From Macrostomum lignano (taxonomy: Eukaryota), in contig NIVC01001777.1 of NCBI GenBank assembly GCA_002269645.1, positions 29,429-93,428 of the forward strand: a DNA stretch of 64,000 nucleotides, read 5' to 3'. Under the pieces are notes generated by a model. That model saw nothing but the letters and a program-made list of their open reading frames with translations, was not told the origin of the DNA and ran no database searches. Numbering within the stretch: the stretch's first letter is position 1; every line of letters starts with the position of its first letter. This document shows, in pieces, positions 785-64,000 of the stretch. Position numbers and translations under genes: made by a program.

Positions 785-19082
<18,298 letters not shown>

Positions 19083-38631: not shown

Positions 38632-38915
38632 TGTTCTGGAGGTTCATTTTTTGTCATATTTTTGGGGGTTTACTTATTTAATTGTACATGTATTTTCTCT
38701 TTATTTAATGTACACGAGCCAACCCCCCTCAATTTGCTAACCCCACCCCACGTTAAATAATAATTAAAAAGGGCGTGATTTTTGGTCAGCGTGTTTTTTG
38801 CTAACTGGGTTGTTTTGTTTGCCTGCGCGAGAACGCAGAGGTATTGAAGGCTACAAACATCCGATTTTTGCCTACTTAGTTATTTTTCGGTTTCGAAGAG
38901 TTAGTCGATTTAACA
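38632..38915 (+). repeat. 5' LTR of BEL/Pao element 1
   Basis: TGTTCTGGAGG...GATTTAACA, 284 bp. Confidence 0.95.
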
Positions 38916-38917
38916 AC

Positions 38918-38935
38918 TGGTAGCAGAGCGTGGTT
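38918..38935 (+). promoter_or_regulatory. Primer-binding site, complementary to the 3' end of initiator tRNA-Met
   Basis: TGGTAGCAGAGCGTGGTT, 2 nt after the LTR; matches ...CTCTGCTA-CCA of metazoan tRNA-iMet (from memory). Confidence 0.75.
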
Positions 38936-38940
38936 GAAAA

Positions 38941-41900
38941 ATGCAAAAGGACGGAGAAGAATTCGAGTCGAACTACCCGCCGGCTGACGAGGAAGAACGC
39001 AAGCTGATGGACGCGAAGGCCGCCAAGACGAGGGCCAAGGCCGCATTCACCAAAGGAAGAAACCGGCTGGTGCAACAACTCGCTGCTGGTGGTCAAGACG
39101 GCGCCGAAGTACAACAGCAAGCGACTCAGTTGAAGAAGCTGGCTGATCTGGTGGATGTAGCGGTTATCAATCTGATGGAGGCGGGTCGTGAAGCTGAACT
39201 AGACAGCAATGGATTGCTTCATCTTCGCGTGCAAAAGAAATTGCCGACTGACACCCTGGCACGATACCACCGATGGGTCGGGGAGAATGGCAGAAATGAC
39301 ACGCTCAGCGCTCTTCATCAATGGCTGCTGCGGGAGGCTGAGTATCAGACGGTTGCTATGGAGGCAGTGCATGGAGTTGCGGCACAGAATGGGCCAGGAG
39401 CAGGGAAGATGGAGCAAAGTAAGAAATTCAGCGGGAGACAGCTCGAACGCATTTTGGCGCTGTCGCGGAGTCAACGAGAGCCGATGAGCAGCGCAAGAAA
39501 AACTGCCGTGTCTGTGAAGGAAGCCATGGCGCCTGGGAGTGCCCGAAGTTTGCGGAGATGAATGTAGTGAAGCGATGGGCCGTTGCTCGTGAGAAGAAGC
39601 TGTGCTTTCATTGTCTCGGCGTCAATCACTCTGGTTTAGCTTGTCGGCGGTCTAGAACCTGTGGCGTAGATGGTTGCCAGGGAAAACACCATCGAATGCT
39701 TCACCAGAAGCGGGAGCCGAAACCAGCAGCTGCAGTGACGAGAGGCGGCGAAGGAGAGGCACGAAAACCCGCGGAGGACATATCAGCGGCGACGAAGAAG
39801 GAGCGCACTATGCTGGCTGAAGTCGTAAAGGAAACTGCGTTGAGGACGGTGCCGGTGATATTGGTGGCTGGTGAGCGCCAAGTTCGGATCAACGCGTTGC
39901 TTGATGATGCGAGTACGCGCACGTACCTCAATGCGGACGTAGCAGCAGAGCTGGGACTGGAAGGTAAACTTCAGCGCATAAACGTTAAGGTGCTCAACGG
40001 AGGAGTCGAGTCGTTTGAAACAGCGCCTGTAGAAGTGACAGTCCGGAGTGTCGATGCAGCGTTTGAGACAAAAATTGTTGCTTTCACAGCGGAGAAAGTA
40101 ACCGGCGGAATGAAGGCAGTTGATTGGAGTCAACTGGCGGAGCACTGGGCGCATCTGAGAGGCATTCCGTTTGAGTCAACATCAAGCCGGAAAACGGTTG
40201 ACATGCTTATCGGTGTCGACAATGCTGAGATGCATCTGGCTTGCAAAGAAGTCTGTGGAATTCCAGGGGAACCAATAGCTCGACTGACTCCTATTGGATG
40301 GACCTGCATCGGGCAGTTAGGTTCGGATGAGGGAAGCAGCAAGAGCGGGGAATCGTTCCTCTGCCACGAGTGTCAAGATCAGGTCGACAGTCAGGTTCGA
40401 AGGTTGTGGGCGATCGAGGAAGTTCCTGATGTAGCTGAGCTGAACCGCGAAAGTGGGACGTTAACTGCGGATGAGCAGCGTGCTGTGGCGGTAGTCAAGG
40501 AGTCGATGTCGATGGTGGAAGGAAGATATCAGGTAGCCATTCCATGGAAGTCTCAAAATCGTGCTCTGCCGAGCAATCGTGAAGCTGCGGAACGCAGACT
40601 GATCAGCACGGAGAAGCGACTGCAGAGGAGTGAAGGATTGCCAAAAGCGTATCAGGAGGTGTTGGAAGGTCAGTTGGAAAAAGTTTATCTCAAGAAGGTC
40701 GAAGACAGCAGTGAGCTTCAAAACACCGAATGGTACCTGCCGCATTTTCCGGTAATCAGAGAAGACAAGGACACCACCAAGGTCCGTATCGTGTTTGACG
40801 CTTCCGCGCGCTGCCAAGGAGTGAGTCTCAATGACGTCATCCTTCCAGGACCGAAGCTTCAGAACGACCTATTTCAAGTGCTCCTTCGATTCCGTCGCGG
40901 TCCAGTGGCAATCGTTTGCGACATTGAAGAGATGTACCTCAGAATTCGCCTCAAGCCAGAAGATCGGCGCTACTTTCGATTTTTGTGGCGAGACAGGAAC
41001 GAAACGGGCAAACCTGAGGTATTCGAGTTTCAGAGTGTCGTTTTTGGAGTTAATTGTTCGCCGTTTCTTGCTCAGTTCGTGTCGCAGGAGCATGCTAGGA
41101 GTCATCAGGAAACTTTTCCAAGAGCGTCAGAAACCATTCTGAAGTCGACCTACATGGACGACAGTTTGGACTCAGTGAACAGCGTCCATGAAGCTATCCA
41201 GTTGCGCCGCGAACTGACAGCTCTGTGGGAAAAAGCCGGCATGCGTGCGAGAAAATGGATGTCGAACGCGTCTGAGGTGTTGGAGACAGTAGCTCCGGAG
41301 GATCGAGCGGTGAAAGCGCAGCACTTGCTTCGTGGAGAAATGGCGACGTCGAAGGCGTTGGGAGTGACTTGGACAGCCAATGATGATATGCTCGCGATCA
41401 CGGGAAATGCAGGTGCGAAGGAAGTGTCCGTTGAGTCGAAACGACAGCTGCTCAAGCGCGTTGCGATGGTGTTCGACCCATGCGGGTTTCTGAGTCCATT
41501 TACAATTCGCGGGCGAATTCTTCTGCAGGAGATTTGGCAGAATGGAGCGGATTGGGATGAGCCCTTGGATCAGCAAGTTGCCGCGAAGGCTACGCAATGG
41601 GCAGCGGAGATTGAAGAGTTGAGCATGCTGAAAATTCCACGATGTCTATGGCCTGATCCTACCAAAAAGGCAGTGCTACACGTCTTTGTGGATGCATCTC
41701 AGGTGGCTTACGGCGCGGTAATCTATCTCAGGAGCGCCACAAGCCTGGACGAAATCTGTGTTCGTCTTGTAGCCGCAAAAGCACGTGTAGCTCCATTGGC
41801 AGCATGCAGCATCCCCAGACTCGAGCTCATGGCGGCGGTGCTTGGCGTGCGACTCGCCCAGACGGTGGCAGATGCGCTCGATTTAGACCTGAGAGAGTCG

Positions 41901-43742
41901 GTGTTCTGGAGTGACAGTGCAAATGTGCTCTGGTGGCTTCGAGGTCGCAGTAGAATTTTCAAGCCGTTCGTAGCAAATCGTGTTGCGTTCATTCAGGAGG
42001 CGGTGAAGACTTGTCAGTGGCGTCACGTGCCGACCGATCTGAACCCCGCTGATGCCGTATCGCGAGGCTGTAGCGCCAACGACCTTTGCCAATCAGCGGT
42101 CTGGAGCGCGGGACCAGAGTTTCTGCTGCTAGATGAGGATGGCTGGCCGGCAAGGCTAGTTCCGACATCGGTTGACGGAGATCAAGAAGTTCGGCGAGAG
42201 GCGAGCAAGAGTAGTAAATCGGCGGCCGTAACTCTGTTGTCGAACGACACTACAGACAACGATTGGCGTTTGAATCCAGAGCGATTTTCGAGCTACCGCA
42301 GGCTGCGTAGCGTGACAGCATGGGTTCAGCGCTTCATCAGTAATTGCCGACTTCCACGAGATGAGAGACGACTTGGTGACCTCGAGGTCGAGGAGCTGCA
42401 AGAAGCTGAGGATCGAATCCTACGCGTGGCTCAGGAAGAAGCTTTCAAAGCAGAAGTTCAGCAGGTGCGTAGGGGAAAGCCAGTCTTCTCCAGCAGTCAG
42501 CTTCGCTGTCTCCAACCATTTCTTGATGAAGACGGACTGCTGCGAGTGGACGGAAGACTGAAGTTCGACCAGAATCTGTCATATCAGTCCAAGCATCCGG
42601 TCATTCTGCCGAGGCGAAGTTGGGTCACGAAGTTGTTGGTGAAGCACTATCACGAAGATCAAGGACATGGCGGAACAAACCAGACGCTGGCAGCGATGTC
42701 GACGAAGTTTTGGGTGATCGGTGGGCGCGAAGCCATTCGAGAATGGGAGAAGGAGTGCGCGCGATGCAGAAGGCAAAAAGCAGGACCGGAGGTGCAGCAG
42801 ATGGCGCCGCTGCCAGAGGCCAGGCTGAAGAACTCTCTCCGAGCGTTCAGCTTTGTGGCAGTCGACTTCGGTGGTCCGTTTGAAACGGTACAAGGACGCG
42901 GAAGACGGCGAACGAAGAGGTATTTGGCCCTGTTCACCTGTTTGGAGACGAGAGCCGTGCACCTAGAGATGGCGTATAGCTTGGATTCTGACTCGTTTCT
43001 GAATGCTTTCGCGCGCATGATCAACCGTAGAGGCCGGCCACTCGAAGTTTACTCGGACAACGGCGGCAACTTTGTCAAAGGCGAGCGAGAACTACGAGAA
43101 TTCGAAAACGAGCAGCAGAACAAAATCCAGAGAGCGGCAGCTGAGCGCGGCATCAAGTGGCGCTTCCAGCCTCCGTCGGCGCCCCATTTCGGCGGCGCCC
43201 ACGAAGTTATGGTTCGCGCCGCTAAGCGAGCTGTGCGCGCCATCCTTAGCAACGCTGACATCACCGACGAAGAGCTGCATTCCGCCTTCACAGGTGCGGA
43301 AGCGCTCATCAATTCCAGGCCGCTGACATACCAAACCACAAGCCCAAAGGACGACACGCCGTTGACGCCAAACCATTTCTTGCATGGACAGCTGGGTGGT
43401 GACTTTGCTACGGAAGTCTCGACCGAGGTCAGCCGCGACCCGCGCCGGCGGTGGCGACGTGTCCAAGAGCTGGTGCGGCACTTCTGGCACCGATGGCTGC
43501 GTGAGTGGGTGCCAAGACTCAACGCCAGATCCAAGTGGGTCAAGGAGCAGCCGGATCTCGCCGTCGGCGACATCGTCTTGGCGCTACGAGCGGATGCGCC
43601 TCGAGGACACTGGCCGCTCGGGCGAGTTCTCGAGGTATTTCCTGGACGAGACGGCCATGTGCGCGTGGCCAAGGTGCGGACTGGCGGTGGGACAGTGCTG
43701 CGACCCGTGACGAAGTTGTGTGTGCTGCAGCGAGGTGAATAG
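38941..43742 (+). CDS. BEL/Pao Gag-Pol polyprotein (Gag internally deleted; -1 frameshift at ~39425)
   Basis: Zn knuckles CRVCEGSHGAWEC and CFHCLGVNHSGLAC; protease LLDDAS; RT YLPHFPV..KVRIVFDAS and YMDD; RNase H FVDAS; integrase HH-CC, VDFGGP, SDNG. Confidence 0.93.
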
Positions 43743-44351
43743 TGACTGTTGACTTATTGCTAAACAAAACTTTTCAAATATGTAGTTTTTTGACGGCTAG
43801 TTTATGGTGTTTGGAATTATTTATCTTTTTCGTGTCATTATTTGCCGTTTTTTGCTCCTAATAGCTGATGTGGTGACGGGTTGCTTATTTTTGCGTATTT
43901 TGTGTTTTTTTATTCTGAGTAAAAAAGACCTGTTGCTTGCTTGAATGCGAGTTCTTTTGGCAGTTTTTGTGCTTTGATTTTTTCATATGTTTACAGTAGG
44001 GATTATTTAAGTTTTCAAGACATTTTTTATCCCGTGTTATTTCACTAATTATCGTTTGAGCGTCTTTGAGTTCGTTTGTGTTCGTCTCTTAGCAGATATT
44101 TTTTGTGTTGGCTAGCGATTGCAAAGGTTTATATTTGGCACACTATCTTTTGATCCCAATTGACACTTCACATTGCATGCGTTCTTAATGTTAATTTCTG
44201 ATTTCGCGCGATTTATTTTTTTTTGTTTACAGGAGTTTACTGTTTTTTTCGAATTATGCTCGCAACCGTTTCAATTAATTGCACGTAAGTTTCAAGGAGG
44301 CGATTTTTTTTCTGCTTTTTTGCTGATTGGCCCCAATCAGGAAGGGGGGAA

Positions 44352-44634
44352 TGTTCTGGAGGTTCATTTTTGTCATATTTTTGGGGGTTTACTTATTTAA
44401 TTGTACATGTATTTTCTCTTTATTTAATGTACACGAGCCAACCCCCCTCAATTTGCTAACCCCACCCCACGTTAAATAATAATTAAAAAGGGCGTGATTT
44501 TTGGTCAGCGTGTTTTTTACTAACTTGGTTGTTTTGTTTGCCTGCGCGAGAACGCAGAGGTATTGAAGGCTACAAGCATCCGATTTTTGCCTACTTAGTT
44601 ATTTTTCGGTTTCGAAGAGTTAGTCGATTTAACA
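44352..44634 (+). repeat. 3' LTR of BEL/Pao element 1
   Basis: 283 bp copy of the 5' LTR. Confidence 0.95.
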
Positions 44635-48301: not shown

Positions 48302-50160
48302 TGCAGACACAGACACAGACATAGACACTGACATAGACACAGACACAGACACATACATAGACACTGACATAGACATAGACACAGACACAGACACATACAT
48401 AGACACTGACATAGACATAGACACAGACGTAGACATAGACACAGACACAGACGTAGACATAGACATAGACAGACACAGACACAGACACAGACACAGACAC
48501 AGACACAGACACAGACACAGACACAGACATAGACATAGACACAGACACAGACACAGACGTAGACATAGACATAGACATAGACAGACACAGACACAGACAC
48601 AGACACAGACATAGACATAGACACAGACACAGACACAGACATAGACACAGACACAGACACAGACATAGACACAGACATAGACACAGACACAGACACAGAC
48701 ACAGACGTAGACATAGACATAGACATAGACATAGACAGACACAGACACAGACACAGACACAGACACAGACACAGACACAGACACAGACACAGACACAGAC
48801 ACAGACACAGACATAGACATAGACAGAGACACAGACACAGACGTAGACATAGACATAGACATAGACAGACACAGACACAGACACAGACATAGACATAGAC
48901 ACAGACACAGACACAGACGTAGACATAGACATAGACATAGACAGACACAGACACAGACACAGACACAGACACAGACATAGACATAGACAGACACAGACAC
49001 AGACACAGACACAGACACATACATAGACACTGACATAGACACAGACATAGACATAGACAGACATAGACACAGACATAGACACAGACACAGACACAGACAC
49101 AGACATAGACACAGACACAGACACAGACACAGACACAGACACAGACATAGACATAAACACAGACACAGACACAGACATAGACATAGACATAGACAGACAC
49201 AGACACAGACACATACATAGACACTGACATTGACATAGACACAGACACAGACACAGACGTAGACATAGACATAGACAGACACAGACACAGACACAGACAC
49301 ATACATAGACACTGACATAGACACAGACATAGACATAGACAGACATAGACACAGACATAGACACAGACACAGACACAGACACAAACATAGACACAGACAC
49401 AGACACAGACACAGACATAGACACAGACACAGACACAGACACAGACACAGACACAGACATAGACATAGACACAGACACAGACACAGACGTAGACATAGAC
49501 ATAGACATAGACATAGACAGACACAGACACAGACACAGACACAGACACAGACACAGACATAGACATAGACATAGACAGACACAGACACAGACACAGACAC
49601 AGACACATACATAGACACTGACATAGACACAGACATAGACATAGACAGACATAGACACAGACATAGACACAGACACAGACACAGACACAGACATAGACAC
49701 AGACACAGACACAGACACAGACACAGACATAGACATAAACACAGACACAGACACAGACATAGACATAGACAGACACAGACACAGACACATACATAGACAC
49801 TGACATTGACATAGACATAGACAGACATAGACACAGACACATACATAGACACTGACATAGACACAGACATAGACATAGACATAGACAGACATAGACACAT
49901 ACATAGACACTGACATAGACACAGACACATACATAGACACTGACATAGACATAGACATAGACAGACATAGACACAGACACATACATAGACACTGACATAG
50001 ACACAGACATAAACATAGACAGACATAGACACAGACACATACATAGACACTGACATAGACACAGACATAGACATAGACATAGAGAAAGACTAGAAGTAGA
50101 CATAGACAAACAAAGACGTAGCAATATACATAGACATAGACATGGACATAGGACAGACCT
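48302..50160. repeat. (GACACA/GACATA)n hexanucleotide microsatellite, ~1.85 kb
   Basis: Read directly. Confidence 0.97.
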
Positions 50161-51014: not shown

Positions 51015-54000
51015 CTATACAAGCGACTGATTGTCGGACGTGTGCGACACGTTGGAAAAGATCGACGTTCGCTGACGAATAGTGGCGTCGTGGTGCTTGA
51101 CCATACGCTCGAACACCTGGTCCATGGACATCTGGTGCAGCGAGAAATAGTAGATATTCAGACTCTTGCGATTCTCCAATAACCAGCTGAGTGCCACGGA
51201 CAACCGGCTGACGCTGCCGACAGGGATGGCTAAGTGCACCCGATCGTGGAACTCTTCAACGACTTTAGTGTCTTTGAACTTCTTGCTGACCGCCTCAATT
51301 AGGGTGGCCATTTTCGCTTCGACACTGTCCTCCGCCTCATCTACGGAGGTGTTGAGCAGAATTTCTAGGCTGTAGCTCCGGCCGTACCTGCGTGTTTGGC
51401 AGCAGATCGGGGCTGTTGTTTCCACGACAGTGAGGTGCATTTTGTGTTTTAGATCTGGTCTTATAGTCTTATATCGTAGGTACGCTCACACAGGGTGTAC
51501 CGGTACAGCGGCTCAGACTTTCTTCATGGGCGCGATTTGCGCAACGATTCCAAGGCGAGCGACTTCTTCTCTTCCCCAGACAACACTAAGTATCATTTAC
51601 TGGTCTTTTTAAAAGCTTATAATAATAATATAATAAGAAATAATAATTGATTACACCTGCCCAAATTGGGCCAGATGTGTAACCGACAGCTCAGCCGCAG
51701 CTATTGCTCGGCGCATCTGAAGGCTGCGTACGGCTGTTCAGTCCAAGGACTGGGGGGTCGCCACACACACCCTCAATTACCCCAGCTAATGCTGGCACCC
51801 ATTTTACAGCTGGGTGAACTGAAGCAATGCAGAGTTAAGTCTTGCTCAAGGACACAAATTGTTCAGAGTGGGTCGACAATCGAACCCCCGACTTTTCAGT
51901 CGTGAGTCCGACACTCTTGAACACTAGGCTACAATCTCCTAGGCTAAAACTGATAGAAGCGAATACTTACAAACTCTTTAGCTGTTGCACGGTGCCCAAA
52001 CCAACCAGCAAGCCTCGATTGATGATAGTAACCCGGTTGCAGATCGCTTCGACCTCTTCCATGCTGTGCGTAGTGACAAGCACCGTGCAGGTGAGGGTCG
52101 CCGCAGCCCGAATCGCCTGCCAAAGAAATCTTTTACCCTCCGGATCGACGCCTGTCGTGGCTTCGTCAATGACTAGCACAGAGGGCTCGCTGAGTAGCGA
52201 GATAGCCAACGACAAGCGTCGACGAATGCCGACAGACAGATGCTCGGCTAAACTCTCTCTGTCGAGATTCAGGTCCAGACTGTCGGCTAGTTCTTCAATG
52301 AGAGAATCCAATTTGCTATCTGGCACGCCGATGATATTGGCGTAGAATTTCAGATGCTCCATCGCCGTGATGCAGCCGTACAAGGGATCGGATTGCGGAC
52401 AGTAGCCGATTGCGCCTCGACTAGTGGCCAGTCCGCTCGGCAGCCATTCGTCCTGCCGGCGCACTTCGCACCGACCTCTGGTTGCATTTAACCGACCAAC
52501 AATGGTACTCAGTGCCGTTGTCTTGCCGGCACCGTTTGGTCCCAAAATGCCAAAGATTTCCGCCGGTCCGGTGGCGAAGCTGATATCGCGAACCACTTTG
52601 GTACCGTTTGGATAAGTCTTGGCCAGGTGGCTCACCTCCAGGAGGTTCATCTCGCTGTTTGGATTCGCGTCGATTCGTTCTGTTTCCTCTTTGACTCCGG
52701 GATCCTCAGTAAGGTTGTCGAATGTCCCGACTGGCAGTTCAGAGGTGCATTTAATCTGTTGGTGGATTAGTAGAAGGCCTACTGAATTAAATAACATAAA
52801 GTGAATCTCTTATGCGAACAAAATGGTTGCATGTCCAATGATAGTTACATATAATTAGAACTGTCTCCTGTGTCTCCACAGGTGAGGCTGTTAAGGTCAG
52901 TTGACATTAGTGAAGAACTCAGAAACATGTCCCTGGCCTATATAGGCCCTGGCCTATCGCGAAATCAAATGTCACTTTTGGAATCTTCCATTTTTATATC
53001 GTTAAATGTGGCTGATTAATGGTTCTAACAGATTAGAAAGAATTTAGACTTGTTATTAGTTGTAATTTATACTTCTGCTATATTTTTGAAAATTCTGTAG
53101 ATTCAACAATAAGCATTACTAAGTGGTTTTCCTCCACACAACCCTTACCTGCAACCGAGCCTCCAACAGTTGAAGTAGAATTATCTTGTTCTCAATGATA
53201 GCCAGCGCTGTTAGCAGCACAGCAAAGTGAAGGATAATTGCTATGAACGCTGCTACCACGTGTGGCTGCGAGAAAAACAAGCTGCCCTTTAGTTCGGTGA
53301 TGTCTGAGATGCTGTCTTTATTGTAGTATGACAGAGAATAGAATATTGTCTTCACGCCGTAGAAAGTCAGGGCTATTGGAGCGAATGGCGGCAGAACAGA
53401 AATGAGTATTATTGATGCCACATTGTTGAGTTGCACGAGTAGCACAATAAATGCCAGTAATATTGAGGTGAATAAATACATTATGGTCACAAGATGATTG
53501 GCCCTGTCTAGAATAGTGCTAAGCACGTAAGTCATGAGCTGATTGCTTGGCAAGCCTAGCAGCAGTATAGGCAAGAATACGCCAGTCATGAAGAATGAAC
53601 TAGAATAGCCAGTTTGCACGATGGATAGCAGCAATAGTGTGCTCAAAGAGTACACAGTGGCGTACTGAACCCAATGAATGATAAAGTTAGTGAGCCAGTA
53701 GCTGAAGTTGCTCATGCCTATTGTAGAAAGCTGATAGCGAACTTGAGTCTCCTTGTCTTCAATGATGTCGTCGAGGAAAGTGGCTGGTATCAGCGACATG
53801 ATCAGTATCTGGAAGAAGGCTCCAAATGCCGGTACAAAGGTGGTGCGAAAGTCGTAGACGCTCTCAGCAGAAAATAAAAACTTTTTATCGTCAGGAGGTT
53901 CATCGGAACGCGCTACTGTTGTAAAGTAAGACGTGGCCCTCATATATGTTCCAATCGTTAAGGACGCCGATTTTGACGAGTTAAAATTTTCATAAATATC

Positions 54001-57000
54001 ATACGTCCCATAATAGATAACTCGCTCGGAATTGGGCGTGTTGTCACCCCAATCTATGGTGTAAGTTATCGGACACGGTTCCGCATCCGGCTTGCGGGAT
54101 TTGCACACCTTTTGGATTTTCTCAATATTGGATTTCTCTCGCAGAAAATTTTGCAGCTCAACTTCTTTCGGCTTCTGTAAAGCCAGGTAGTTTTTAGCTA
54201 TCTCCATGGGCGCAGTCTTACCAGCGTACAACCAACTGCAACGCCTCTTATCAACCTCCCATAGCATACGCGGCTTGCCTTCTACCTTTTCAAAGACGCA
54301 GACGCCGTGCTTGATTATTTCGCCTTCATTAGTCATGTTATTGCGCAGATGGATGCGATGATTATTGTTAGACCGTTCGATTGCGGCTGTGATTATCAGC
54401 ACTATCAGTAGTATGGCAGGCACAATCACCCGGCAGGCTAGGCGCATCCGAGTTCTTACCAGTCGCATCACATTGACAATTATCATTGCCTTTAGCTGGC
54501 GCAGCAGCGATGGAGCCAGCGGTGCGTGCTCTCTGGTGACAATGCAACTCAGCTTTGTGTTTCTATCCGTACTGGCTTCTGAAAAGGTCTCTTCCTGTTC
54601 GTCCTCAAATCCTTCGGCGTTTTCTTTGTCTTCGCTGAACATCTCTTGGACAGCTTCAGGGTCGAGATCTTTTAATTTCATAAAAATATCATAGAGAGAG
54701 GCCTGCAACAGCCCAAACGCTGAGACAAGCGTCATTCGTTTTTCGAATGCTTGGGCCAGGGCCGGCAAAAAGTTGATATCCCTGGCTGGCAGTTGAAAGT
54801 TCAGATTTACGCCAAAACTTTTCTTAACCTTGACCATTTTGAACTCTTCCAGGATTTGCTTTTTAACTAATTTCGAGTGCTTTTCATTCTTCAGCGTCAC
54901 TTCAAACACGAAGCCGCAGTCGAATGCGCTCTTTAAAAACAAGGACGAACCTGCACAGAGTAGTGCACCGCTAGATATGAAAATCTTCCTATCCGCCAAC
55001 GTGTCCGCCTCGTCCATGAACTGCGTGCTGATCAGTATGGCTCGGCCGTGTCTGTACTCTTGCAATAGGCGCCACATTCGTCGACGCGACTCCGGATCGA
55101 GTCCGCTAGTTGGCTCGTCCAAGAACAGGACACGCGGGTTGCCCATCAGCGCCATGATGACGGCTAGTTTGCGCTGCTGCCCGGCACTCAACCGGCCAGT
55201 CCGATAGTGCCGCTTATTATCTAGCCGGGCCACTTTTAACATCCTGGTGAGCTCCTCCTGGCACTCGTTCCATTGCAGGCCGCAACTGATAACTAACAGC
55301 TGTAACGTCTGTTCAACCGTGATGCTCGATGCAAAGTTCATGATCTGCGGACAGATGCCTAGATGGCCTCTGAGTCGAAGGCGTTTTAACGGATTCGTTC
55401 CAACGATGCCGCAGATTGACGCGTGACCAGTAGTCGGCGTGTCGGCTCCCGTCAGCAGATTGAGCAGTGTAGTCTTGCCGGCGCCGTTGTGACCAATGAT
55501 GGCGGTGATGTGGTTCTCATAAACCATAGCTGCAGGTGGAGGTTTTATGTTGGTTTGTTACTTGATACAGAAAATTTCAGTTGTTAAAATGCTCGTCCTT
55601 GATTACGTTTTTTGTCGCGAGTCAATCAAAATAAAGATTGCTGCGCCTCACCTGACATATCCTTGACAGCGTAGAAAGTCTCCGACTTGCCGCACGCCTT
55701 TCTGGCTTGAAACGCTTTGCTAAGGTGGCTCATTCGTACTAACGGTCGCAGTCCATCAGTAACTGGTTCGATATTTGCGTACTCCGGAGGCTCCTCGCCG
55801 TACAGTGGATCGTCCTTCTCCGGTCCGAGCTCTTTACTAGCTGGCTGGGCCGTCCAAAACTCTCTTCGGATGAAGAATTGAGCAGGTAGACGGAACCCGT
55901 TCCCGGACCCGCTCACGTAGTCCAACACCAGCGTGCTTAGTACTAGGACCACCGCTGATAGCAGGGTGACAACCAGAATGCTAATATTGTAAATGCTGAT
56001 TGATTCCATTCGAATCTCGGATAGCAGAATGCCTTGCACGAATTCTGCGAAGTGACCCAGAGGAAATATGAATAGTAATATGATCTTCAATACTACGATA
56101 GTACTGATTGCCATTCGGTTGACTAGTACTAGCACCATCGAGATAATAGCAATCAGCACAGTCATCAGTCCCACGTAGTAGTAGTTGCCGAATGTGACTG
56201 TGAGCAGTAGGCCAACGGAGGTGAGCGCCACCATGTAGAACAAAGACATCAAAAACACTAGCAGCATGTGAACGGGATTGAAAAAGCCCGGACATTGAAC
56301 GGCTAATGAAGTGACGAATATTATTGAGAATGAAACGATTTCTATTGCGGTCATTGCGCTTATAACTAGCCAATAGGCTGAAACTGACAAACCCTTCTGC
56401 ATCATGAGCTGCAGAAAGCCGTCCCGCTTTAGTTGAGCGATGCACGACTGCGTTGACACCAGAAAGTAGAACGACATTGAGCCAATAATTATGACGCATT
56501 GCATCATAACGGTGCGCGAGAATACTGTCTCAAAGTTTTCGTGCTTAGCGCATTTTGTCGTATTGCCCCGCACCGAGTCAGTTTTCTTGCCCTCTTTCCG
56601 GCTTGTCAGGCTAAAGAAGTGGATCTCCTTGTACATATAGTTCTTCCACTTGTTTGGGTAGCTGGACATCACGGCCAGGTTTCCCAGGTAGGGACAATTA
56701 AGGTCACCACCGTACGACATCTGGCATTCGACGCGCGGCCGATTGCTGTAATTGTAAGTGACAAAGTTGGAGAACTTACTGGTGTCCACACGGCCAAACA
56801 TAACGCTGAACATCCTGGCTTTGCAGGCCTTCGGATTGGAGCAGGTCTCAATCAAAGAACCGCTGTCCCTAACATTTTCCGAATCGAGAATGCTTTTTAA
56901 GCTTTCCAGCTGTCGTTCATACTTATAAGTTTCAGCCAGTATAAGATTTGATTCCACGAATCGTTTTGTGTCAATCGACGTGTAAACTTGGCCAAGGGTG

Positions 57001-57464
57001 CCCATCCAGCCGTCGATGATTGGGAACAGCATGTGATTAGAGATTGCGGATAGGAACACAATGATGAACCAGATGAACTTCCAACGTTTCATATGCAGCA
57101 TCAGCATCAGCAGCTGGTTTGTCTGCTCCCTAGTGCCGATCGCCTGTTGTGGCAGTCGCGGTTGTGCATGCAAATCATTATTAATTTATTCTGATTGTTA
57201 CATATTTGAGGTGAACTAATTCATGTTAGAAAATAGTCGAAAAAATGAGAGAAAGCTAGCGAATAAAAATATTTGTCAACTACGCCCTCGGGGCCGTTGT
57301 GTTCTGGCTTGTGTCGTGTCCTTGATGAATTTGGCTAAAATTTCATTTTCGGCTTGGTAGTGCCATTTGATAGGTTAAATATTTTGCAGAGTTCTCTACT
57401 CTTTGGCTCCAATCAGCCAAATTAAAGCATTAAAGTCTCTTTATTAGTAAAAACAACTTACCAT
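51015..57464 (-). CDS. Full-size ABCA-subfamily transporter (ABCA5/6/8-like); exons 57464-57462 (ATG only), 57143-55652, 55529-53149, 52755-51971, 51387-51015
   Basis: Two TMD+NBD halves; GHNGAGKTT / LSAGQQRKL / LDEPTSGLD and GPNGAGKTT / LSVGIRRRL / IDEATTGVD; ADRKIFISSGALLCAGSSLFLK; splice phases are consistent. Confidence 0.92.
51619..51936 (-). mobile_element. tRNA-derived CORE-type SINE in ABCA intron 4
   Basis: Minus strand: A-box TAGCCTAGTG, B-box GGTTCGATT, CORE-like TGTGTCCTTGAGCAAGACTTAACTCTG...CTGTAAAATGGG, 3' stem-loop and (TTA)n tail. Confidence 0.78.
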
Positions 57465-58474: not shown

Positions 58475-60656
58475 TTAGAATGGAAATTTCCAGACAAAGA
58501 TTCCTCCATCATCGGACACGGTAACGATCAGGCGGTTGTTGGGACAAATTTTAGCCCGCATAATTGGCGAACTGTGGCCCAAGCCAACGTGAGTGACGTC
58601 ACCCTGCGCGTAGCGCCACACCTGCGTAGGGTAAGTAATCGATCCGTTTGTTATTTAGCCGTAGCTTTAACTTTGTTTTAATCACAAAAGTAGTTGGGTT
58701 TTATTACATGATTGGGGACTCTTTTATGAGGCTGAGGGTGTTTAGATTGAGGATATCTGGTAAAAACAGGCATTTGGTTTAAAACACCGGTCTATTATAG
58801 GTTGTAGGATTTAGTTGAGGACCTCAATCATCACGGGTTGTAGGATTTGGTTGAGGACCTCAATCACCACGGGAGGTAGGATTTGGTTGGGGACCTCAAT
58901 CATCACGGGAGGTAGGATTTGGTTGGGGACCTCAATCATAACGGGTTGTAGGATTTGGTTGGGGACCTCAATCATCACGGGAGGTAGGATTTAGTTGGGG
59001 ACCTTAATCATCACGGGTTGTAGGATTTGGTCGAGGACCTCAATTATCACGGGTTGTAGGATTTAGTTGAGGACCTCAATCATCACGGGTTGTAGGATTT
59101 AGTTGGGGACCTTAATCATCACGGGTTGTAGGATTTGGTCGAGGACCTCAATTATCACGGGTTGTAGGATTTAGTTGAGGACCTCAATCATAACGGGTTG
59201 TAGGATTTAGTTGAGGACCTCAATCATAACTGGTTGTAGGAGTTAGTTGAGGACCTCAATGATCACGGGTTGTAGGATTTGGTCGAGGACCTCAATCATC
59301 ACGGGTTGTAGGATTTAGTTAAGGACCTTAATCATCACAGGTTGTAGGATTTAGTTGAGGACCTCAATCATAACTGGTTGTAGGATTTAGTTGAGGACCT
59401 CAATCATCACGGGTTGTAGGATTTGGTTTGGGACCTCAATCATAACGGGTTGTAGGATTTGATCGAGGACCTCAATCATCACGGGTTGTAGGATTTAGTT
59501 GAGGACCTCAATCATAACGGGTTGTAGGATTTAGTTGAGGACCTCAACCATTACTCATAAAATCATCACTTTTACAACACTCACCTTAACAATCTTATCA
59601 TCGCCAGCGGTAACAAAGTACTGTCCATCCAAGCTGATGTCCATCCCGTTAACGGAGCCACTGCGGGAGCCGTCCAGTTCGCGAACCAGAGTGCCATCGT
59701 ACAGCTCCCAATAGGAGATCTTGCGGTCCGTGCCGCTCGTGATTACTTGGCACTCTTCCGGCTCGAAGCAGACGCACCGAAACAGAGTTTTGGAAAACAT
59801 GATCTGCTTGCGGTGGAACGTCCTGCGAGGGATTTCGAATATGGGAACGTCAACTGGGATTCGTGTCATCCTCTATGCTTAAGGAAGAATTAAATTATAC
59901 TTAATACTTTGGTTATGGTACTTGCTTAACTGCTCGATATCCGATGCTCAATCCTCACTGCTCAATCCTCATTGTTCAATCCTCACTGCTCAATCCTCAC
60001 TGCTCAATCCTCATTGCTCAATCCTCACTGCTCAATCCTCACTGCTCAATCCTCACTGCTCAATCCTCACTGCTCAATCCTCACTGCTCAATCCTCACTG
60101 CTCAATCCTCACTGCTCAATCCTCACTGCTCAATCCTCACTGCTCAATCCTCACTGCTCAAAACTCACTGCTCAAAACTCACTTGAGATCCCATACAATG
60201 CAGCTGCCATCCGCCGAGGCCGAAACGCACTGAGTATTGTCCTTGGACACTCGGATACACGACACAGCATTGGCGTGCTCCTTCATGGCTTCCTCTAGCT
60301 CCGTGACGAACGTCTTCTGGCCGGATTTCGCGACTCGTTCCTGAACTCGCCATACCCTGACCTGACCTTCGCCGCCGCCAGAAATGATTCGTCCGCAGTC
60401 GGACGTTGCCGTGATAGCCGTGACGCCTTTCTTGTGCGCCTCGTTGATGGTGTACATCAGGCGGCCAGTCTCCGGGAAGAACACCCGGATTTTGCTGTCG
60501 TCCCAACCGGAAACGATGCCACTGCCGTCGCGAAGAAAATCGATGGCGTAGCAGGTCATGTTTGGCACCGTGATGCGCAGCAGCTCCTTCTGGGTTGGCG
60601 TGTGCCACACCCGGATGTCCTCGTAGGAGCAGGTGGCGAACAGGTCGGAGGTGCCG
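58475..60656 (-). CDS. CFAP52: Cilia- and flagella-associated protein 52 (WDR16), last three exons 60656-60183, 59822-59585, 58621-58475; upstream exons lie beyond the window
   Basis: LFATCSYEDIRVW..ELLRITVPNMTC, ITSGTDRKISYWE..GTLVRELDGS, GDVTHVGLGHS..VWKFPF-stop; GT-AG phases are consistent. Confidence 0.93.
58810..59550. repeat. CFAP52 intronic minisatellite, 36 bp unit with TTGAGGACCTCAA palindrome
   Basis: About 20 copies. Confidence 0.95.
59945..60182. repeat. CFAP52 intronic minisatellite, 14 bp unit whose first copy is the splice donor
   Basis: Minus strand: GTGAGTTTTGAGCA x2, then (GTGAGGATTGAGCA)n. Confidence 0.95.
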
Positions 60657-60704
60657 CTGAAAAGAGTTGCGCGGGAAAAATTATGCACACCCAAGTAGTT
60701 TTGC

Positions 60705-61568
60705 GTCAGGTTGTTGAGTAGCTTATTGAGGTGTATTGGGTCAGGTTGTTGAGTAGCTTTATGAGTTGTATTGGGTCAGGTTGTTGAGTAGCTTAGTGTG
60801 GTGTATTGGGTCAGGTTGTTGAGTAGCTTAATGAGGTGTATTGGGTCAGGTTGTTGAGTAGCTTAATGAGGTGTATTGGGTCAGGTTGTTGAGTAGCTTA
60901 ATGAGGTGTATTGGGTCAGGTTGTTGAGTAGCTTAATGAGGTGTATTGGGTCAGGTTGTTGAGTAGCTTAATGAGGTGTATTGGGTCAGGTTGTTGAGTA
61001 GCTTAGTGTGGTGTATTGGGGCAGGTTGTTGAGTAGCTTAATGAGGTGTATTGGGTCAGGTTGTTGAGTAGCTTAATGTGGTGTATTGGGTCAGGTTGTT
61101 GAGTAGCTTAATGAGGTGTATTGGGTCAGGTTGTTGAGTAGCTTAATGAGGTGTATTGGGTCAGGTTGTTGAGTAGCTTAATGAGGTGTATTAGGTCGGG
61201 TTGTTGAGTAGCTTAATGAGGTGTATTAGGTCGGGTTGTTGAGTAGCTTAATGTGGTGTATTGGGTCAGGTTGTTGAGTAGCTTAGTGTGGTGTATTGGG
61301 GCAGGTTGTTGAGTAGCTTAATGAGGTGTATTGGGTCAGGTTGTTGAGTAGCTTAATGTGGTGTATTGGGTCAGGTTGTTGAGTAGCTTAATGAGGTGTA
61401 TTGGGTCAGGTTGTTGAGTAGCTTAATGAGGTGTATTGGGTCAGGTTGTTGAGTGGCTTAATGAGGTGTATTGGGTCAGGTTGTTGAGTAGCTTAGTGTG
61501 GTGTATTGGGTCAGGTTGTTGAGTAGCTTAATGAGGTGTATTGGGTCAGGTTGTTGAGTAGCTTAATG
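60705..61568. repeat. CFAP52 intronic minisatellite, 35 bp unit (GGTTGTTGAGTAGCTTAATGAGGTGTATTGGGTCA)
   Basis: About 24 copies; abuts the LTR end at 61569. Confidence 0.96.
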
Positions 61569-61838
61569 TGTTTTGATGGTTCATTCAATAAATTGAGTCT
61601 TCGCAGTAAGCGACTATTTTTCGGCTACTAGCCAACCGAACAAAACAACCAGCGTGCGCACTCTCTCTGGAGAGGCTGATAACTATATATTGCAATAATT
61701 TTAAATAAATGGGGTGGGTGCTGCTGAACATTATAAATGGGGGCTGGGGCTGAAACGTACGTATCAAAATCTCTGCTATGAAAGTTACGCGTAGGTGAAT
61801 GAAAAGTACACTCGTACATGTAAGCCAACTCCTAAACA
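61569..61838 (-). repeat. 3' LTR of BEL/Pao element 2 (270 bp)
   Basis: Starts TGTTTAGGAG directly after the PPT and ends CATCAAAACA; shares CCCACCCCA and GGTTGTTTTGTT motifs with the element 1 LTR. Confidence 0.85.
61582..61625 (-). other. Spliced-leader-like sequence embedded in the LTR
   Basis: GCCGAAAAATAGTCGCTTACTGCGAAGACTCAATTTATTGAATG versus recalled Macrostomum SL GCCGTAAAGACGGTCTCTTACTGCGAAGACTCAATTTATTGCATG; 25 nt exact core. Confidence 0.75.
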
Positions 61839-62447
61839 TTCCCCCCTTCCTGACAGAGCAATGTCAGCAACAAAGACCGGAAACACTGAACTTGAGTACC
61901 TAGTAACCGAACGGACAAACTATGACCATAGCAAAAAAAAAACATACAACGCCTGGGAACAGCACGAGAAGCGTGAGGGCTCAAAAGAGCTCAAAAGCCA
62001 AACTGAAAAGATGTTTCGGCACCCGCCACCAAGACTCGCAAATGAAAACAATGAAAATGCGCAAGACCGCAAACTGAAATAAGTTACCACTAAACATCAA
62101 AAAATATAAAAATTTGCAACTCAGCTTAAACTCGCAATTTTAATAAAGTCGAAAATGGTTGACAGAAAAAACCCATCACCGTAACTTAACAGAAACTTCA
62201 AACAGCTCAAACTCAAAGGAAAAACAAATGCGCCAACTGCGCTCCAAAAAAATCTGATCCCAAAAAAAACCATGAACAAAAACAGACACAACCAATAATC
62301 AAAAAGGCAACGGCTTGAAAAGCCCAAAACTGGCAGAAAGCCTACTGAACGCACACGATACAGTACAAACAATTTGAAAACTCAGCGTAAACTCGGAAAA
62401 GTCCGGAAAAGAAAACAAACAGTTCTTAAGCAAATGATCAACTCCTC

Positions 62448-64000
62448 TCACTCGAGATAGCACAGTTTGCTCACAGGCCGCACGAATACCGTCCCACCGA
62501 CCTGGACCTTGGCCACCCGGACTCGATTGTCTGAACCTGGGTAGACTTCGACTACTCGTCCCAACGGCCAGTGTCCCCGCGGTGAGTCTGCTTTGATGAC
62601 GAGAACGACATCACCTGGCTGTAAATCACGCTGCGGTCCCGCCCACTTGGCTCTCGGCTGCAACCCTGGCAGCCATTCGCGCATCCAGCGTCGCCAGACG
62701 TGCCTCACGAGTTCTTGGACGCGCCGCCACCGCCGCCTCGGGTCAGCCGCGACGTCGTCGGGCACATCCGGCGCGAATTGTCCACCAGCTTGACCGTGCA
62801 GGAAATGGTTTGGCGTTAGTGGCTCTTCGTCTCTCGGATTCGCCGATTGATAGGTGATGGGGCGCGAGTTGATAAGCGCCTCCGCTCCAGTGATCGCTGA
62901 CTGAAGCTCCTCGTCGGTGACATCTGCGCTGCCCAGAATCGCGTGTAGCGCTCGCTTCGCAGCCCGAATCATCACCTCGTGGGCTCCACCAAAGTGCGGG
63001 GCGGCTGGCGGCTGGAAGTTCCACTTGACTCGCTGCTTGGATGTCTCGCGACTGATCCTTGTCCTGTCCAGCTCCTCCAGAAGTCGCAGTTCATCTGCAC
63101 CTTTTACAAAGTTGCCACCGTTGTCAGAATACATAGCCTTGGGTAAGCCACGCCTGTTCACCATTCGGTAGAAGGCGTTCAAGAAAGAGTCCGCGTCAAG
63201 GCTGTAGGTCATCTCGAGGTGTACCGCTCGCGTCTCGAGGCATGTGAACAGCGCCAAATAGCGTTTCTGCCTCTTCTTAAATCGGCCTTGAATAGTGACG
63301 AACGGCCCTCCCATGTCGACGGCTACGTTCGTGAAGGCTTTTAAGGATCCTGCGACACGGGCATCAGGCAGTGGCGCCATCTGTTGTACGATGGGACGAG
63401 CTTTCTCTCTCTTGCACACAGCGCATTCAACCTCCCACTCGCGAATAGCTTCCCGAGCACAGATAACCCAATACTTGGCTGACAGCGCCGCCAGAGTTTG
63501 GTTAGTCCCACCATGGCTCTGCTGCTCGTGATATTGTTTGATGATCAGCTTGGTGATCCAATGCTTCCGCGGCAAAATAGATGGATGTCTTGCTGCAAAT
63601 GGCGCCTGTGGCCTGAATTTCAACCGGCCATCCACTCGTAGGACTCCTGCTGCATCACGTACCGGCTGCAAGCACCGCAGCTTCTTCTCGTTCACTGTAT
63701 CCGTCTTGAACGCTTCCTCCTGAGCTAACCTTACCAAACGCTCCTCGACCTCCTCGAGCTCATCCACCAACAGCTCACCGCCGCTCCGCTGATACTTCTC
63801 CGTCTGACAGTTCCGAATGAACCGCAACACCCAAGCGAAGACGCGCTGCAGTCGATGGAAACTAGAGAATCGCTCTGGTTTGAGTCGCCAGCCTGTCTTG
63901 TCTTCTTCATCGGTGGTGACCAGACATACGGGCTCTGCACAACGCTTCTGGATGCTTGCTAGCCTCTTCGACGGGTATTCGCCTCAGTAGTTTCTGGCGC
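62448..64000 (-). CDS. BEL/Pao Pol C-terminus (post-RNase H region and integrase)
   Basis: HEQQSHGG..CAVC, VDMGGP, SDNGGNF, HFGGAHE, GHWPLGRV. Confidence 0.93.

What the first reader, a model, noticed from the sequence alone, without database searches (positions are those of the whole stretch)
61582..61625. Host spliced leader captured in the U5 end of a BEL/Pao LTR
Seen (minus strand, end of the 270-bp LTR): GCCGAAAAATAGTCG-CTTACTGCGAAGACTCAATTTATTG-AATG, then only 13 nt (AACCATCAAAACA) to the LTR end. Known (from memory): the Macrostomum lignano SL is GCCGTAAAGACGGTCTCTTACTGCGAAGACTCAATTTATTGCATG. The match spans the whole leader from GCCG to the terminal ATG, with a 25-nt exact core. No GT donor or Sm site follows, so this is not an SL RNA gene. 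The related element 1 LTR shares upstream motifs (CCCACCCCA, GGTTGTTTTGTT) but not this segment. Inference: a trans-spliced genomic RNA was reverse transcribed, so strong-stop DNA copied the SL, and a non-homologous strand transfer fixed it in the LTR. The family may now encode its own leader, mimicking trans-spliced mRNA for translation or silencing evasion, supplying an AUG, or base-pairing with SL RNA. I know of no description of this.
Basis: partly seen in the sequence, partly recalled or inferred. Interest (0 to 1): 0.9.

Follow-up and report, generated by a model that had tools for sequence, protein, structure and literature searches.

The report
Spliced-leader copy inside a retrotransposon LTR
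A flatworm BEL/Pao retrotransposon carries, 13 bases from the end of its terminal repeat, a DNA copy of the host's 45-base spliced leader; this is most likely a scar left when a trans-spliced element RNA was reverse-transcribed, and no function is shown.

Summary
On the minus strand, 61625..61582 reads GCCGAAAAATAGTCGCTTACTGCGAAGACTCAATTTATTGAATG. It matches the published 45-nt Macrostomum spliced leader (SL) at 39 of 45 aligned positions, with a 25-nt exact core that is unique in the window.

Similarity starts at the SL RNA 5' end (GCCG) and stops at the exon/donor boundary (ATG). Genuine SL RNA genes continue with GTAAGACACCG and an Sm-like site. Here the sequence continues AACCATC, and there is no GT for the next 886 nt. 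It is therefore a retro-copied SL exon, not an SL RNA gene.

The copy lies inside a 270-bp 3' LTR (61838..61569). This LTR has a conserved polypurine tract, TGTTT...AAACA termini, and motifs shared with two related BEL/Pao LTRs that lack any SL. A 35-bp satellite in a CFAP52 intron begins right after the LTR.

Best explanation (confidence about 0.6): an element RNA trans-spliced 13 nt upstream of the U5 end was reverse-transcribed, and a template switch joined the SL copy to the LTR.

The 5' LTR lies beyond the window and no other family copies could be retrieved. Family-wide fixation and any leader-mimicry function are therefore untested, and the TATA-like boxes suggest the SL copy lies inside the transcript rather than at its 5' end.

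This is a new variant of the relict SLs known from dinoflagellate retrogenes.

The parts
61582..61625 (-). DNA copy of the complete 45-nt Macrostomum-type spliced-leader exon (44 nt here). It runs from the SL RNA 5' end (GCCG) to the exon's terminal ATG.
   Evidence: 39/45 identity. Similarity to genuine SL RNA genes begins and ends exactly at the exon boundaries.
61586..61610 (-). 25-nt core identical to the canonical SL
   Evidence: unique in the window, 0 of 100 shuffles produce a match.
61569..61581 (-). Last 13 nt of the LTR (AACCATCAAAACA). Proposed to be what remains of the original U5 downstream of the trans-splice acceptor. It ends in the ...AACA terminus shared with related LTRs.
   Evidence: el1 ends ...GATTTAACA and L007 ends ...CTAGAACA. 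There is a 5-nt terminal inverted repeat TGTTT/AAACA with the LTR start.
61569..61838 (-). 3' LTR of BEL/Pao element 2 (270 bp, TG...CA)
   Evidence: the start is fixed by the polypurine tract and by homology to el1, L007 and L008. The end is fixed by the terminal inverted repeat and the abrupt start of an unrelated satellite.
61839..61851 (-). Polypurine tract AGGAAGGGGGGAA immediately upstream of the LTR
   Evidence: the same tract precedes the 3' LTR of element 1 and the LTR of L008. L007 has GAAGGGGGGAGA.
61639..61650 (-). GGTTGTTTTGTT motif shared with the element 1 and L007 LTRs. It is the last clearly homologous block before the SL copy.
61683..61720 (-). C-rich block followed by TATA-like boxes (ATTTATTTAAAA, AATATATAG), 66-85 nt upstream of the SL copy. 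This is the putative LTR promoter.
   Evidence: The position is conserved in three LTRs; promoter function is inferred.
62448..64000 (-). 3' part of the element 2 pol gene (integrase zinc-binding domain, integrase core, DUF5641), running off the window end. The last ~515 codons are uninterrupted.
   Evidence: 62% amino-acid identity to element 1 pol, which carries Peptidase_A17 (Pao).
60701..61568 (.). 35-bp minisatellite (24.8 copies) abutting the LTR end. It is host intron sequence and is unrelated to the LTR terminus.
   Evidence: 536 of 1000 shuffles reach the observed alignment score.
60179..60694 (-). ORF spanning the exon of the host CFAP52 orthologue that encodes residues ~342-490 (the exon itself starts after the TCTTTTCAG acceptor at about 60660). 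It shows that element 2 and the satellite sit in a CFAP52 intron in the sense orientation.
   Evidence: acceptor TCTTTTCAG| before the exon.
38632..44634 (+). Element 1, a complete related BEL/Pao element used as comparator. It has 284-bp LTRs without any SL and a PBS (TGGTAGCAGAGCGTGGTT) 2 nt after the 5' LTR.

Best explanation
The segment is a relict spliced leader: a DNA copy of the SL exon that entered the LTR of a BEL/Pao retrotransposon through reverse transcription.

Proposed sequence of events:
1. An ancestral element RNA was SL-trans-spliced at an acceptor 13 nt upstream of the end of U5. The SL replaced R and most of U5 (the outron), while the primer-binding site, the leader and gag-pol were kept.
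2. tRNA-primed minus-strand strong-stop DNA copied those 13 nt and then the whole SL up to the RNA 5' end.
3. With no R homology left, synthesis continued after a non-homologous or microhomology-guided template switch. The acceptor was either the 3' end of the RNA or the R/U5 region of a co-packaged unspliced RNA. The switch landed just after ...GGTTGTTTTGTTCGGTTGGCTAGTA.
4. Plus-strand transfer then copied the new U3-R-(SL+13 nt) unit to both ends of the element.

What is shown: the exon-exact boundaries of the SL copy, its position inside the LTR, and the absence of any SL from related LTRs. What is inferred: the trans-splicing of the element's own RNA and the template switch.

The copy present here is most likely a passive scar with no demonstrated function. 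It would be transcribed as an internal part of the 5' leader.
For: 1. Exon-exact boundaries. Similarity to the SL starts at GCCG, the first base of the 45-nt SL, and ends at ATG. Genuine SL RNA genes continue with GTAAGACACCG, then an Sm-like ATTTTTAG and a terminal hairpin. The window continues AACCATC and has no GT in the next 886 nt.
2. The copy is inside the LTR. A conserved polypurine tract and TGTTT mark the LTR start. The C-rich/TATA-like block and the GGTTGTTTTGTT motif are shared with the element 1 and L007 LTRs. The AAACA end forms a 5-nt inverted repeat with the start. An unrelated satellite begins immediately after.
3. Related LTRs (element 1, L007) have 60-70 nt of unrelated sequence where element 2 has 13 nt plus the SL copy, and overall LTR length is similar at 284, 256 and 270 bp.
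4. A trans-spliced RNA of this kind would keep the PBS. In element 1 the gag ATG lies only 25 nt after the LTR, so such an RNA would look like an ordinary short-leader trans-spliced mRNA (compare the mRNAs).
5. LTR-retrotransposon RNA can be SL-trans-spliced in an SL-using host. The C. elegans Cer1 subgenomic mRNA carries SL1 (PMC3315495).
6. The copy differs from the canonical SL at 6 positions, while about 515 codons of pol are uninterrupted. It is therefore not a contaminating cDNA read, and the differences are unlikely to be simple decay of this insertion.
Against: - Only one LTR of one copy is visible. The 5' LTR lies beyond position 64000, and no other family member could be retrieved from any collection.
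- R, U5 and the transcription start are not mapped.
- The outron and its acceptor no longer exist, so they cannot be inspected. The AG dinucleotides near the U5 ends of element 1 and L007 do not fit the M. lignano trans-splice acceptor motif [T/C]TNCAG.
- A first-strand transfer without R homology is a rare event.
- Divergence is concentrated in the 5' 16 nt (5 of 16 positions against 1 of 29; Fisher p = 0.017), and this is not explained with certainty. It could reflect a variant SL RNA gene in the host, a junction that lies inside the SL, or errors made at the template end.
Confidence: 0.6

Rival explanations
1. The SL came from a cellular mRNA rather than from the element's own RNA. During reverse transcription the enzyme switched templates to a co-packaged, SL-carrying host mRNA and back again, as happens in retroviral transduction or recombination. 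In that case the SL, and possibly the 13 nt after it, are host-derived.
For: Co-packaging and forced copy-choice switching are established for retroviruses (general knowledge). The similarity of the 13 nt to other LTR termini is weak beyond the AACA end.
Against: The junction falls exactly at the SL exon 3' end, and an LTR-type ...AAACA terminus follows 13 nt later, forming the inverted repeat with the LTR start. Two precisely placed switches would be needed, against one for the own-RNA model.
Confidence: 0.15
2. The LTR is truncated, and the SL plus 13 nt belongs to flanking host DNA, such as an older relict-SL retrocopy or SL pseudogene fragment next to which the element landed. On this view the SL is not part of the element.
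For: Only the 3' LTR is visible, and no target-site duplication can be checked. A genomic SL joined to a protein-coding gene may exist in M. lignano (remark in PMC8629364).
Against: - LTR homology with related elements runs to within 13 nt of the SL copy (GGTTGTTTTGTT).
- Between that motif and the SL there is no CA that could serve as an LTR terminus.
- The segment after the SL ends in AAACA, complementary to the TGTTT start.
- The real discontinuity is at 61569/61568, where the satellite starts.
- Downstream sequence is an unprocessed intron, not a retrocopy.
Confidence: 0.1
3. The SL segment is a family-wide, selected module of the LTR leader. It might give the element RNA SL-like translation or stability properties, supply an upstream AUG, or interact with the trans-splicing machinery.
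For: The 3' 29 nt of the copy are nearly perfect (1 change) while the 5' 16 nt carry 5 changes. The pol gene is still open, so the capture may predate this insertion and have been passed on through further rounds of retrotransposition.
Against: - No second copy is available, so conservation cannot be measured.
- TATA-like boxes 66-85 nt upstream place the SL copy inside the transcript, where it cannot carry the SL's cap (inference).
- The RNA fold of the region is no more stable than shuffled sequence (z = 0.13).
- The uneven divergence has simpler explanations: a variant SL source, or a hybrid junction.
Confidence: 0.1
4. It is an assembly or library artefact: a chimeric read joining genomic LTR sequence to cDNA or mRNA-derived sequence.
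For: The site lies between a repeat (the LTR) and a satellite, which is the kind of place where assemblies fail.
Against: The copy differs from the invariant canonical SL at 6 positions, which is not expected for a contemporary mRNA read. Both junctions make biological sense, being an exon boundary and an LTR terminus.
Confidence: 0.03

Closest known systems
Relict spliced leaders in dinoflagellate retrogenes ('mRNA recycling'; Slamovits & Keeling 2008 as cited in PMC3229502; PMC6050394; PMC5585692; PMC12014239)
   Same: The SL is encoded in genomic DNA because a trans-spliced RNA was reverse-transcribed and integrated. The copy is intron-less and decays after integration.
   Different: In dinoflagellates the SL tags the 5' end of retroposed cellular genes, often in truncated tandem series. 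Here a single full-length SL sits inside the LTR of an autonomous BEL/Pao retrotransposon in an animal. That position implies the template was the element's own RNA and that the copy passed through the strong-stop and LTR-forming steps.
SL1 trans-splicing of the Cer1 (Ty3/Mdg4-type) subgenomic mRNA in C. elegans (PMC3315495)
   Same: It shows that RNA of an LTR retrotransposon can be an SL trans-splicing substrate in an SL-using host.
   Different: In Cer1 the SL is found only on RNA of a spliced 2.4-kb message. The 8-kb genomic RNA is not trans-spliced, and no SL is encoded in the Cer1 LTR.
SL-gene-specific non-LTR retrotransposons (SLACS, CZAR and CRE in trypanosomatids; NeSL-1 in C. elegans; from general knowledge, not tested here)
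   Same: SL sequence lies directly next to retrotransposon sequence in the genome.
   Different: Those elements are non-LTR and insert into intact SL RNA genes through a site-specific endonuclease, so SL gene sequence, including the intron, flanks them. Here there is no SL RNA gene (no donor, no Sm site), and the SL exon is internal to an LTR.
Genuine Macrostomum-type SL RNA genes (PMC8629364; environmental loci L005 and L009)
   Same: They share the 45-nt exon, of which the window holds a 39/45 copy with a 25-nt exact core.
   Different: Genuine genes continue with GTAAGACACCG, then an Sm-like ATTTTTAG and a 3' hairpin. The window copy continues with 13 nt of LTR terminus followed by a satellite with no GT.

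Membership tests
SL RNA gene | [quoted passage not shown] | tested here: met
   39/45 identity to the canonical exon, with a 25-nt exact core.
SL RNA gene | GT(A/G)AG splice donor immediately after the exon | tested here: not met
   The window has ATG|AACCATC, and no GT dinucleotide occurs in the following 886 nt. Genuine genes have ATG|GTAAGAC (PMC8629364).
SL RNA gene | Sm-binding site and downstream stem-loops | tested here: not met
   In the alignment to the L005 gene, similarity ends at the ATG. Rfam holds no model that detects even the genuine gene, so it is uninformative here.
BEL/Pao LTR retrotransposon (3' LTR) | Adjacent pol gene with Pao-type domains | tested here: met
   Element 2 has Integrase_H2C2 and DUF5641. 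It is 62% identical to element 1 pol, which has Peptidase_A17, RVT_1, Integrase_H2C2 and DUF5641. Database relatives carry PF05380. The protease/RT part of element 2 lies outside the window.
BEL/Pao LTR retrotransposon (3' LTR) | Polypurine tract directly upstream of an LTR with TG...CA termini and a short terminal inverted repeat | tested here: met
   AGGAAGGGGGGAA|TGTTT...AAACA. The same tract and start occur in element 1 and L008, and similar ones in L007.
BEL/Pao LTR retrotransposon (3' LTR) | Matching 5' LTR followed by a tRNA primer-binding site, and a target-site duplication | not testable with these tools
   The element runs off the window at 64000. The source contig and other copies were not retrievable.
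Relict (retro-copied) spliced leader | DNA-encoded SL with exact exon boundaries and no intron | tested here: met
Relict (retro-copied) spliced leader | The sequence after the SL is the acceptor exon of the RNA that was copied | tested here: inconclusive
   The 13 nt end in the LTR-type AACA terminus and resemble the termini of element 1 and L007 only weakly. The PBS and gag that should follow in the 5' LTR are outside the window.
SL-gene-targeting non-LTR retrotransposons (SLACS/CZAR/NeSL-1) | A non-LTR element inserted within an intact SL RNA gene | tested here: not met
   The element has LTRs and Pao-type pol, and no SL RNA gene is present.

The most novel reading that the evidence does not exclude
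The SL segment is not a one-off scar but a heritable U5 module of an active BEL/Pao lineage. After capture, the family kept retrotransposing with a host spliced leader built into its LTR, and the near-perfect 3' 29 nt are maintained because they do something. They might recruit SL-specific translation factors to an internal leader, provide an upstream AUG, or act as a target or decoy for the trans-splicing machinery. That would be a retrotransposon that has domesticated its host's leader sequence.
Probability: 0.12. Interest if true: 0.8.

Novelty: new variant of a known kind. Interest (0 to 1): 0.55.

Why it matters
If confirmed by the 5' LTR and by sister copies, this would be direct genomic evidence for two things. 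First, the RNA of an LTR retrotransposon is SL-trans-spliced within U5 in a flatworm. Second, an RNA lacking R can still complete reverse transcription and integrate, which would record a non-homologous first-strand transfer in nature.

It would extend the 'relict SL' phenomenon, known from dinoflagellate retrogenes, to animals and to the LTRs of autonomous retroelements. It would also provide a simple sequence tag for finding retro-copied RNAs in any SL-using genome.

I found no description of an SL inside an LTR in the searched literature. That library is incomplete, so this is not proof of novelty.

Tried and rejected
1. Fetching the source contig or other family copies failed by every route.
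- The exact-protein look-up of the integrase ORF found nothing.
- The protein homology search gave at best 65-73% identity.
- The two best loci, L007 and L008, are different families without an SL.
- IMG/VR scans by DNA and by protein found nothing.
- The metagenome and GTDB scans with the 25-mer returned only genuine SL RNA genes (L005, L009) and SL-capped mRNAs (L001-L004, L006), with no LTR copies.

2. The host species was not pinned down. The ABCA ORF's best hits are M. lignano proteins at 31-47% identity. The CFAP52 exon search returned no flatworm hit.

3. Rfam has no model that recognises even the real SL RNA gene.

4. The 35-bp satellite is not derived from the LTR or SL end. This idea was rejected because 536 of 1000 shuffles reach the observed score.

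5. A special RNA structure around the SL copy was rejected (z = 0.13).

6. No other SL-like relics occur in the window. The next-best hit is 11 nt, at chance level.

7. The supplement of the M. lignano LTR-retrotransposon paper is not held as text, so the family consensus sequences could not be screened.

8. The bacterial promoter/terminator scan is irrelevant to a eukaryotic LTR and found nothing. No tRNA genes are in the window to identify the PBS tRNA.

Full report
**The observation**

On the minus strand, window 61625..61582 reads GCCGAAAAATAGTCGCTTACTGCGAAGACTCAATTTATTGAATG. The 25-mer CTTACTGCGAAGACTCAATTTATTG (61610..61586) is unique in the window even with 3 mismatches allowed, and none of 100 shuffles contains it.

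The 45-nt sequence GCCGTAAAGACGGTCTCTTACTGCGAAGACTCAATTTATTGCATG is published for Macrostomum cliftonense. The 43-nt M. hystrix form (PMC10468722 supplement) and the 35-nt M. lignano form (PMC8629364) are identical over the overlap.

The best alignment gives 39 of 45 identical positions, with 5 mismatches and 1 gap. The diverged 5' 16 nt are still significantly SL-like: only 0.14% of window positions match that 16-mer as well.

**It is a copied exon, not an SL RNA gene**

Scanning public collections with the 25-mer returned two genuine SL RNA genes of Macrostomum type. One is L005, a JGI metagenome contig. The other is L009, a contig filed under a Flavobacteriaceae MAG and evidently eukaryotic contamination.

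Both genes carry the identical 45-nt exon, preceded by TTT. Both continue with GTAAGACACCG, then an Sm-like ATTTTTAG and a GCAGCCC...GGGCT hairpin. This agrees with the gene described in PMC8629364.

Aligned to such a gene, the window is similar only from GCCG to ATG, and both flanks are at chance level. After the ATG the window reads AACCATC, and the minus strand has no GT dinucleotide for the next 886 nt.

An intron-less, full-length exon copy that begins at the RNA's first base must have been copied from spliced RNA by a reverse transcriptase that reached the 5' end of its template. Five further hits (L001-L004, L006) are ordinary trans-spliced mRNAs with the SL at the contig 5' end (VDAC, IDH, CNBP-like, GAPDH and arginine kinase). 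Their start codons lie tens of nt behind the SL.

**Where the copy sits**

Upstream on the minus strand lies the 3' part of a pol gene (62448..64000). It has about 515 uninterrupted codons, Integrase_H2C2 and DUF5641 domains, and 62% amino-acid identity to the pol of a complete element elsewhere in the window.

That complete element, element 1, occupies 38632-44634(+). It has Pao peptidase (Peptidase_A17), RT, integrase and DUF5641 domains. Its 284-bp LTRs are 98.3% identical, and a PBS (TGGTAGCAGAGCGTGGTT) lies 2 nt after the 5' LTR. Database relatives of the integrase also carry the Pao peptidase domain.

About 600 nt after the pol stop comes the polypurine tract AGGAAGGGGGGAA (61851..61839), followed by TGTTTAGGAG. 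The same tract and start precede the 3' LTR of element 1 and the LTR of L008, and a similar one precedes that of L007.

The three available LTRs (element 1, element 2, L007) share an architecture: a C-rich block, a TATA-like TTTAA(A/G)A box, a G(G/A)TTG(T/C)TTTG motif, and an ...AACA end. Element 2's LTR ends AAACA at 61569, which forms a 5-nt inverted repeat with its TGTTT start. The LTR is 270 bp long.

At 61568 a 35-bp minisatellite begins (24.8 copies). Its unit has no significant similarity to the LTR end (536 of 1000 shuffles score as well). The SL copy therefore lies inside the LTR, with 13 nt (AACCATCAAAACA) between it and the LTR terminus.

Related LTRs carry no SL. In the same place they have 60-70 nt of unrelated sequence.

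**Host context**

The satellite runs to within about 50 nt of a TCTTTTCAG| acceptor. This precedes an exon encoding CFAP52 residues ~342-490. The next exon downstream encodes residues ~493-571.

The exons for residues 1-341 must lie upstream, beyond the element. Element 2 and the satellite therefore occupy a CFAP52 intron in the sense orientation. What follows the LTR is unprocessed host intron, not a retrocopy.

The host's ABCA ORF matches M. lignano proteins best, but at only 31-47% identity. Neither retroelement has a close match in the protein collection. The host is therefore a Macrostomum-type flatworm whose genome is not in the searchable collections. It cannot be called M. lignano on this evidence.

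**Most likely mechanism (inferred)**

1. An element RNA was trans-spliced at an acceptor 13 nt before the end of U5. That RNA lost R and most of U5 but kept the PBS, the leader and gag-pol. In element 1 the gag ATG lies only 25 nt after the LTR, so such an RNA would resemble a normal short-leader trans-spliced mRNA.
3. Without R homology, synthesis could only continue after a non-homologous or microhomology-guided switch. The acceptor was either the RNA 3' end or the R/U5 region of a co-packaged unspliced RNA. In the second case the normal R-mediated transfer follows.
4. This gives U3-R...GGCTAGTA + SL + 13 nt, and plus-strand transfer copies that unit to both ends of the element.

This accounts for three features: the exon-exact boundaries, the 13-nt LTR-type tail, and the replacement of the homologous U5 stretch. 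A precedent exists for SL trans-splicing of LTR-retrotransposon RNA: the Cer1 subgenomic mRNA in C. elegans (PMC3315495).

**Open points**

The six differences from the canonical SL are unevenly spread: 5 in the first 16 positions against 1 in the last 29 (Fisher p = 0.017). About 515 pol codons remain open, so simple neutral decay of this insertion is an unlikely cause. Four explanations remain:
- the capture is older than this insertion and was inherited through further retrotransposition;
- the source was a variant SL RNA;
- the switch occurred inside the SL at a site of microhomology (the homologous stretch of L007, GAACCAAGAAT, loosely resembles GCCGAAAAAT);
- errors were made at the template end.

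None of these could be tested. The AG dinucleotides near the U5 ends of element 1 and L007 do not fit the M. lignano acceptor motif [T/C]TNCAG, so they give no independent support for a conserved acceptor.

**Function**

TATA-like boxes lie 66-85 nt upstream of the SL copy, so the copy would be internal to the transcript and could not carry the SL's cap. The local RNA fold is no more stable than shuffled sequence. Conservation across copies cannot be measured.

**Comparison with known systems**

The closest known phenomenon is the relict SL of dinoflagellate retrogenes (PMC3229502; PMC6050394, PMC5585692 and PMC12014239). The present case differs in that the SL lies inside the LTR of an autonomous animal retrotransposon.

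It is not an SL RNA gene, because the donor and Sm site are absent. It is not an SL-gene-targeting non-LTR element either.

Papers on M. lignano LTR retrotransposons and on SL trans-splicing do not mention an SL within an LTR, and my literature searches found no such report.

**Verdict**

This is a real and unusual feature whose origin is well explained, but it rests on a single LTR. It is a new variant of a known kind. Interest is 0.55, and would be higher if the 5' LTR and sister copies show the segment to be heritable and conserved.

Noticed in passing
window 38632-44634 (+): A complete BEL/Pao element (element 1). It has 284-bp LTRs that are 98.3% identical, a PBS (TGGTAGCAGAGCGTGGTT) 2 nt after the 5' LTR, a gag ORF at 38941-39561, and a 1394-aa pol ORF at 39558-43742 with Peptidase_A17, RVT_1, Integrase_H2C2 and DUF5641. 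GTA flanks both ends. It appears young and possibly intact.
   Followed up: partly
window 58800-59551, 59945-60183, 60701-61568: Three successive introns of the CFAP52 orthologue are largely filled by minisatellites of 36, 14 and 35 bp (90-96% unit identity). The 35-bp array has no GT on the sense strand over 886 nt. The arrays create spurious long ORFs (for example 59922-60298).
   Followed up: partly
L009 1589-1633 (JAGQZA010000190.1): A contig deposited as part of a Flavobacteriaceae MAG carries a genuine Macrostomum-type SL RNA gene (45-nt exon, GTAAGACACCG donor, Sm-like site). It is therefore flatworm contamination in a bacterial genome bin.
   Followed up: partly
L005 615-725 (Ga0302322_100095745): An environmental metagenome contig holds an SL RNA gene with the identical 45-nt exon. 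About 1.1 kb downstream on the same strand is a long ORF, not characterised here. A partial duplicate of the SL 5' end (GCCGTAAAC) lies 14 nt upstream of the gene.
   Followed up: no
L007 1-2763 (Ga0450804_4074132): One 2.8-kb contig joins integrase, polypurine tract, a 256-bp LTR, PBS and gag. It could be a one-LTR circle, a tandem element, or a transcript assembly collapsed on R. Its PBS is the same as in window element 1, although the integrase (compared with element 2) is only ~65% identical.
   Followed up: partly
window 8960-9530 and 48180-50160: Large arrays of 8-12-bp units (ACATAGACAGAC-like). They are related to each other and, in inverted orientation, to 12465-12721 and 6634-7348. 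They generate 570-612-aa artefactual ORFs at 48270-50124(-).
   Followed up: no
window 9584-12454 (+), 22475-23779 (+), 32961-33722 (+), 53119-57173 (-): Host genes in the window: a BEACH/PH_BEACH-domain exon, an RRM protein, a C2H2 zinc-finger protein, and an ABCA-type transporter. The transporter's best database relatives are M. lignano proteins at only 31-47% identity.
   Followed up: partly
window 27865-28674 (+): This ORF gives a Pfam Microvir_lysis hit (E = 1e-17) with no individually significant stretch. It is almost certainly a low-complexity artefact.
   Followed up: no
literature (PMC8629364): The authors note that the 'SL RNA' reported in 2015 actually maps to the 5' end of a protein-coding gene (Mlig013257.g1) in the M. 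lignano genome. This may be another DNA-encoded relict SL in this genus.
   Followed up: no
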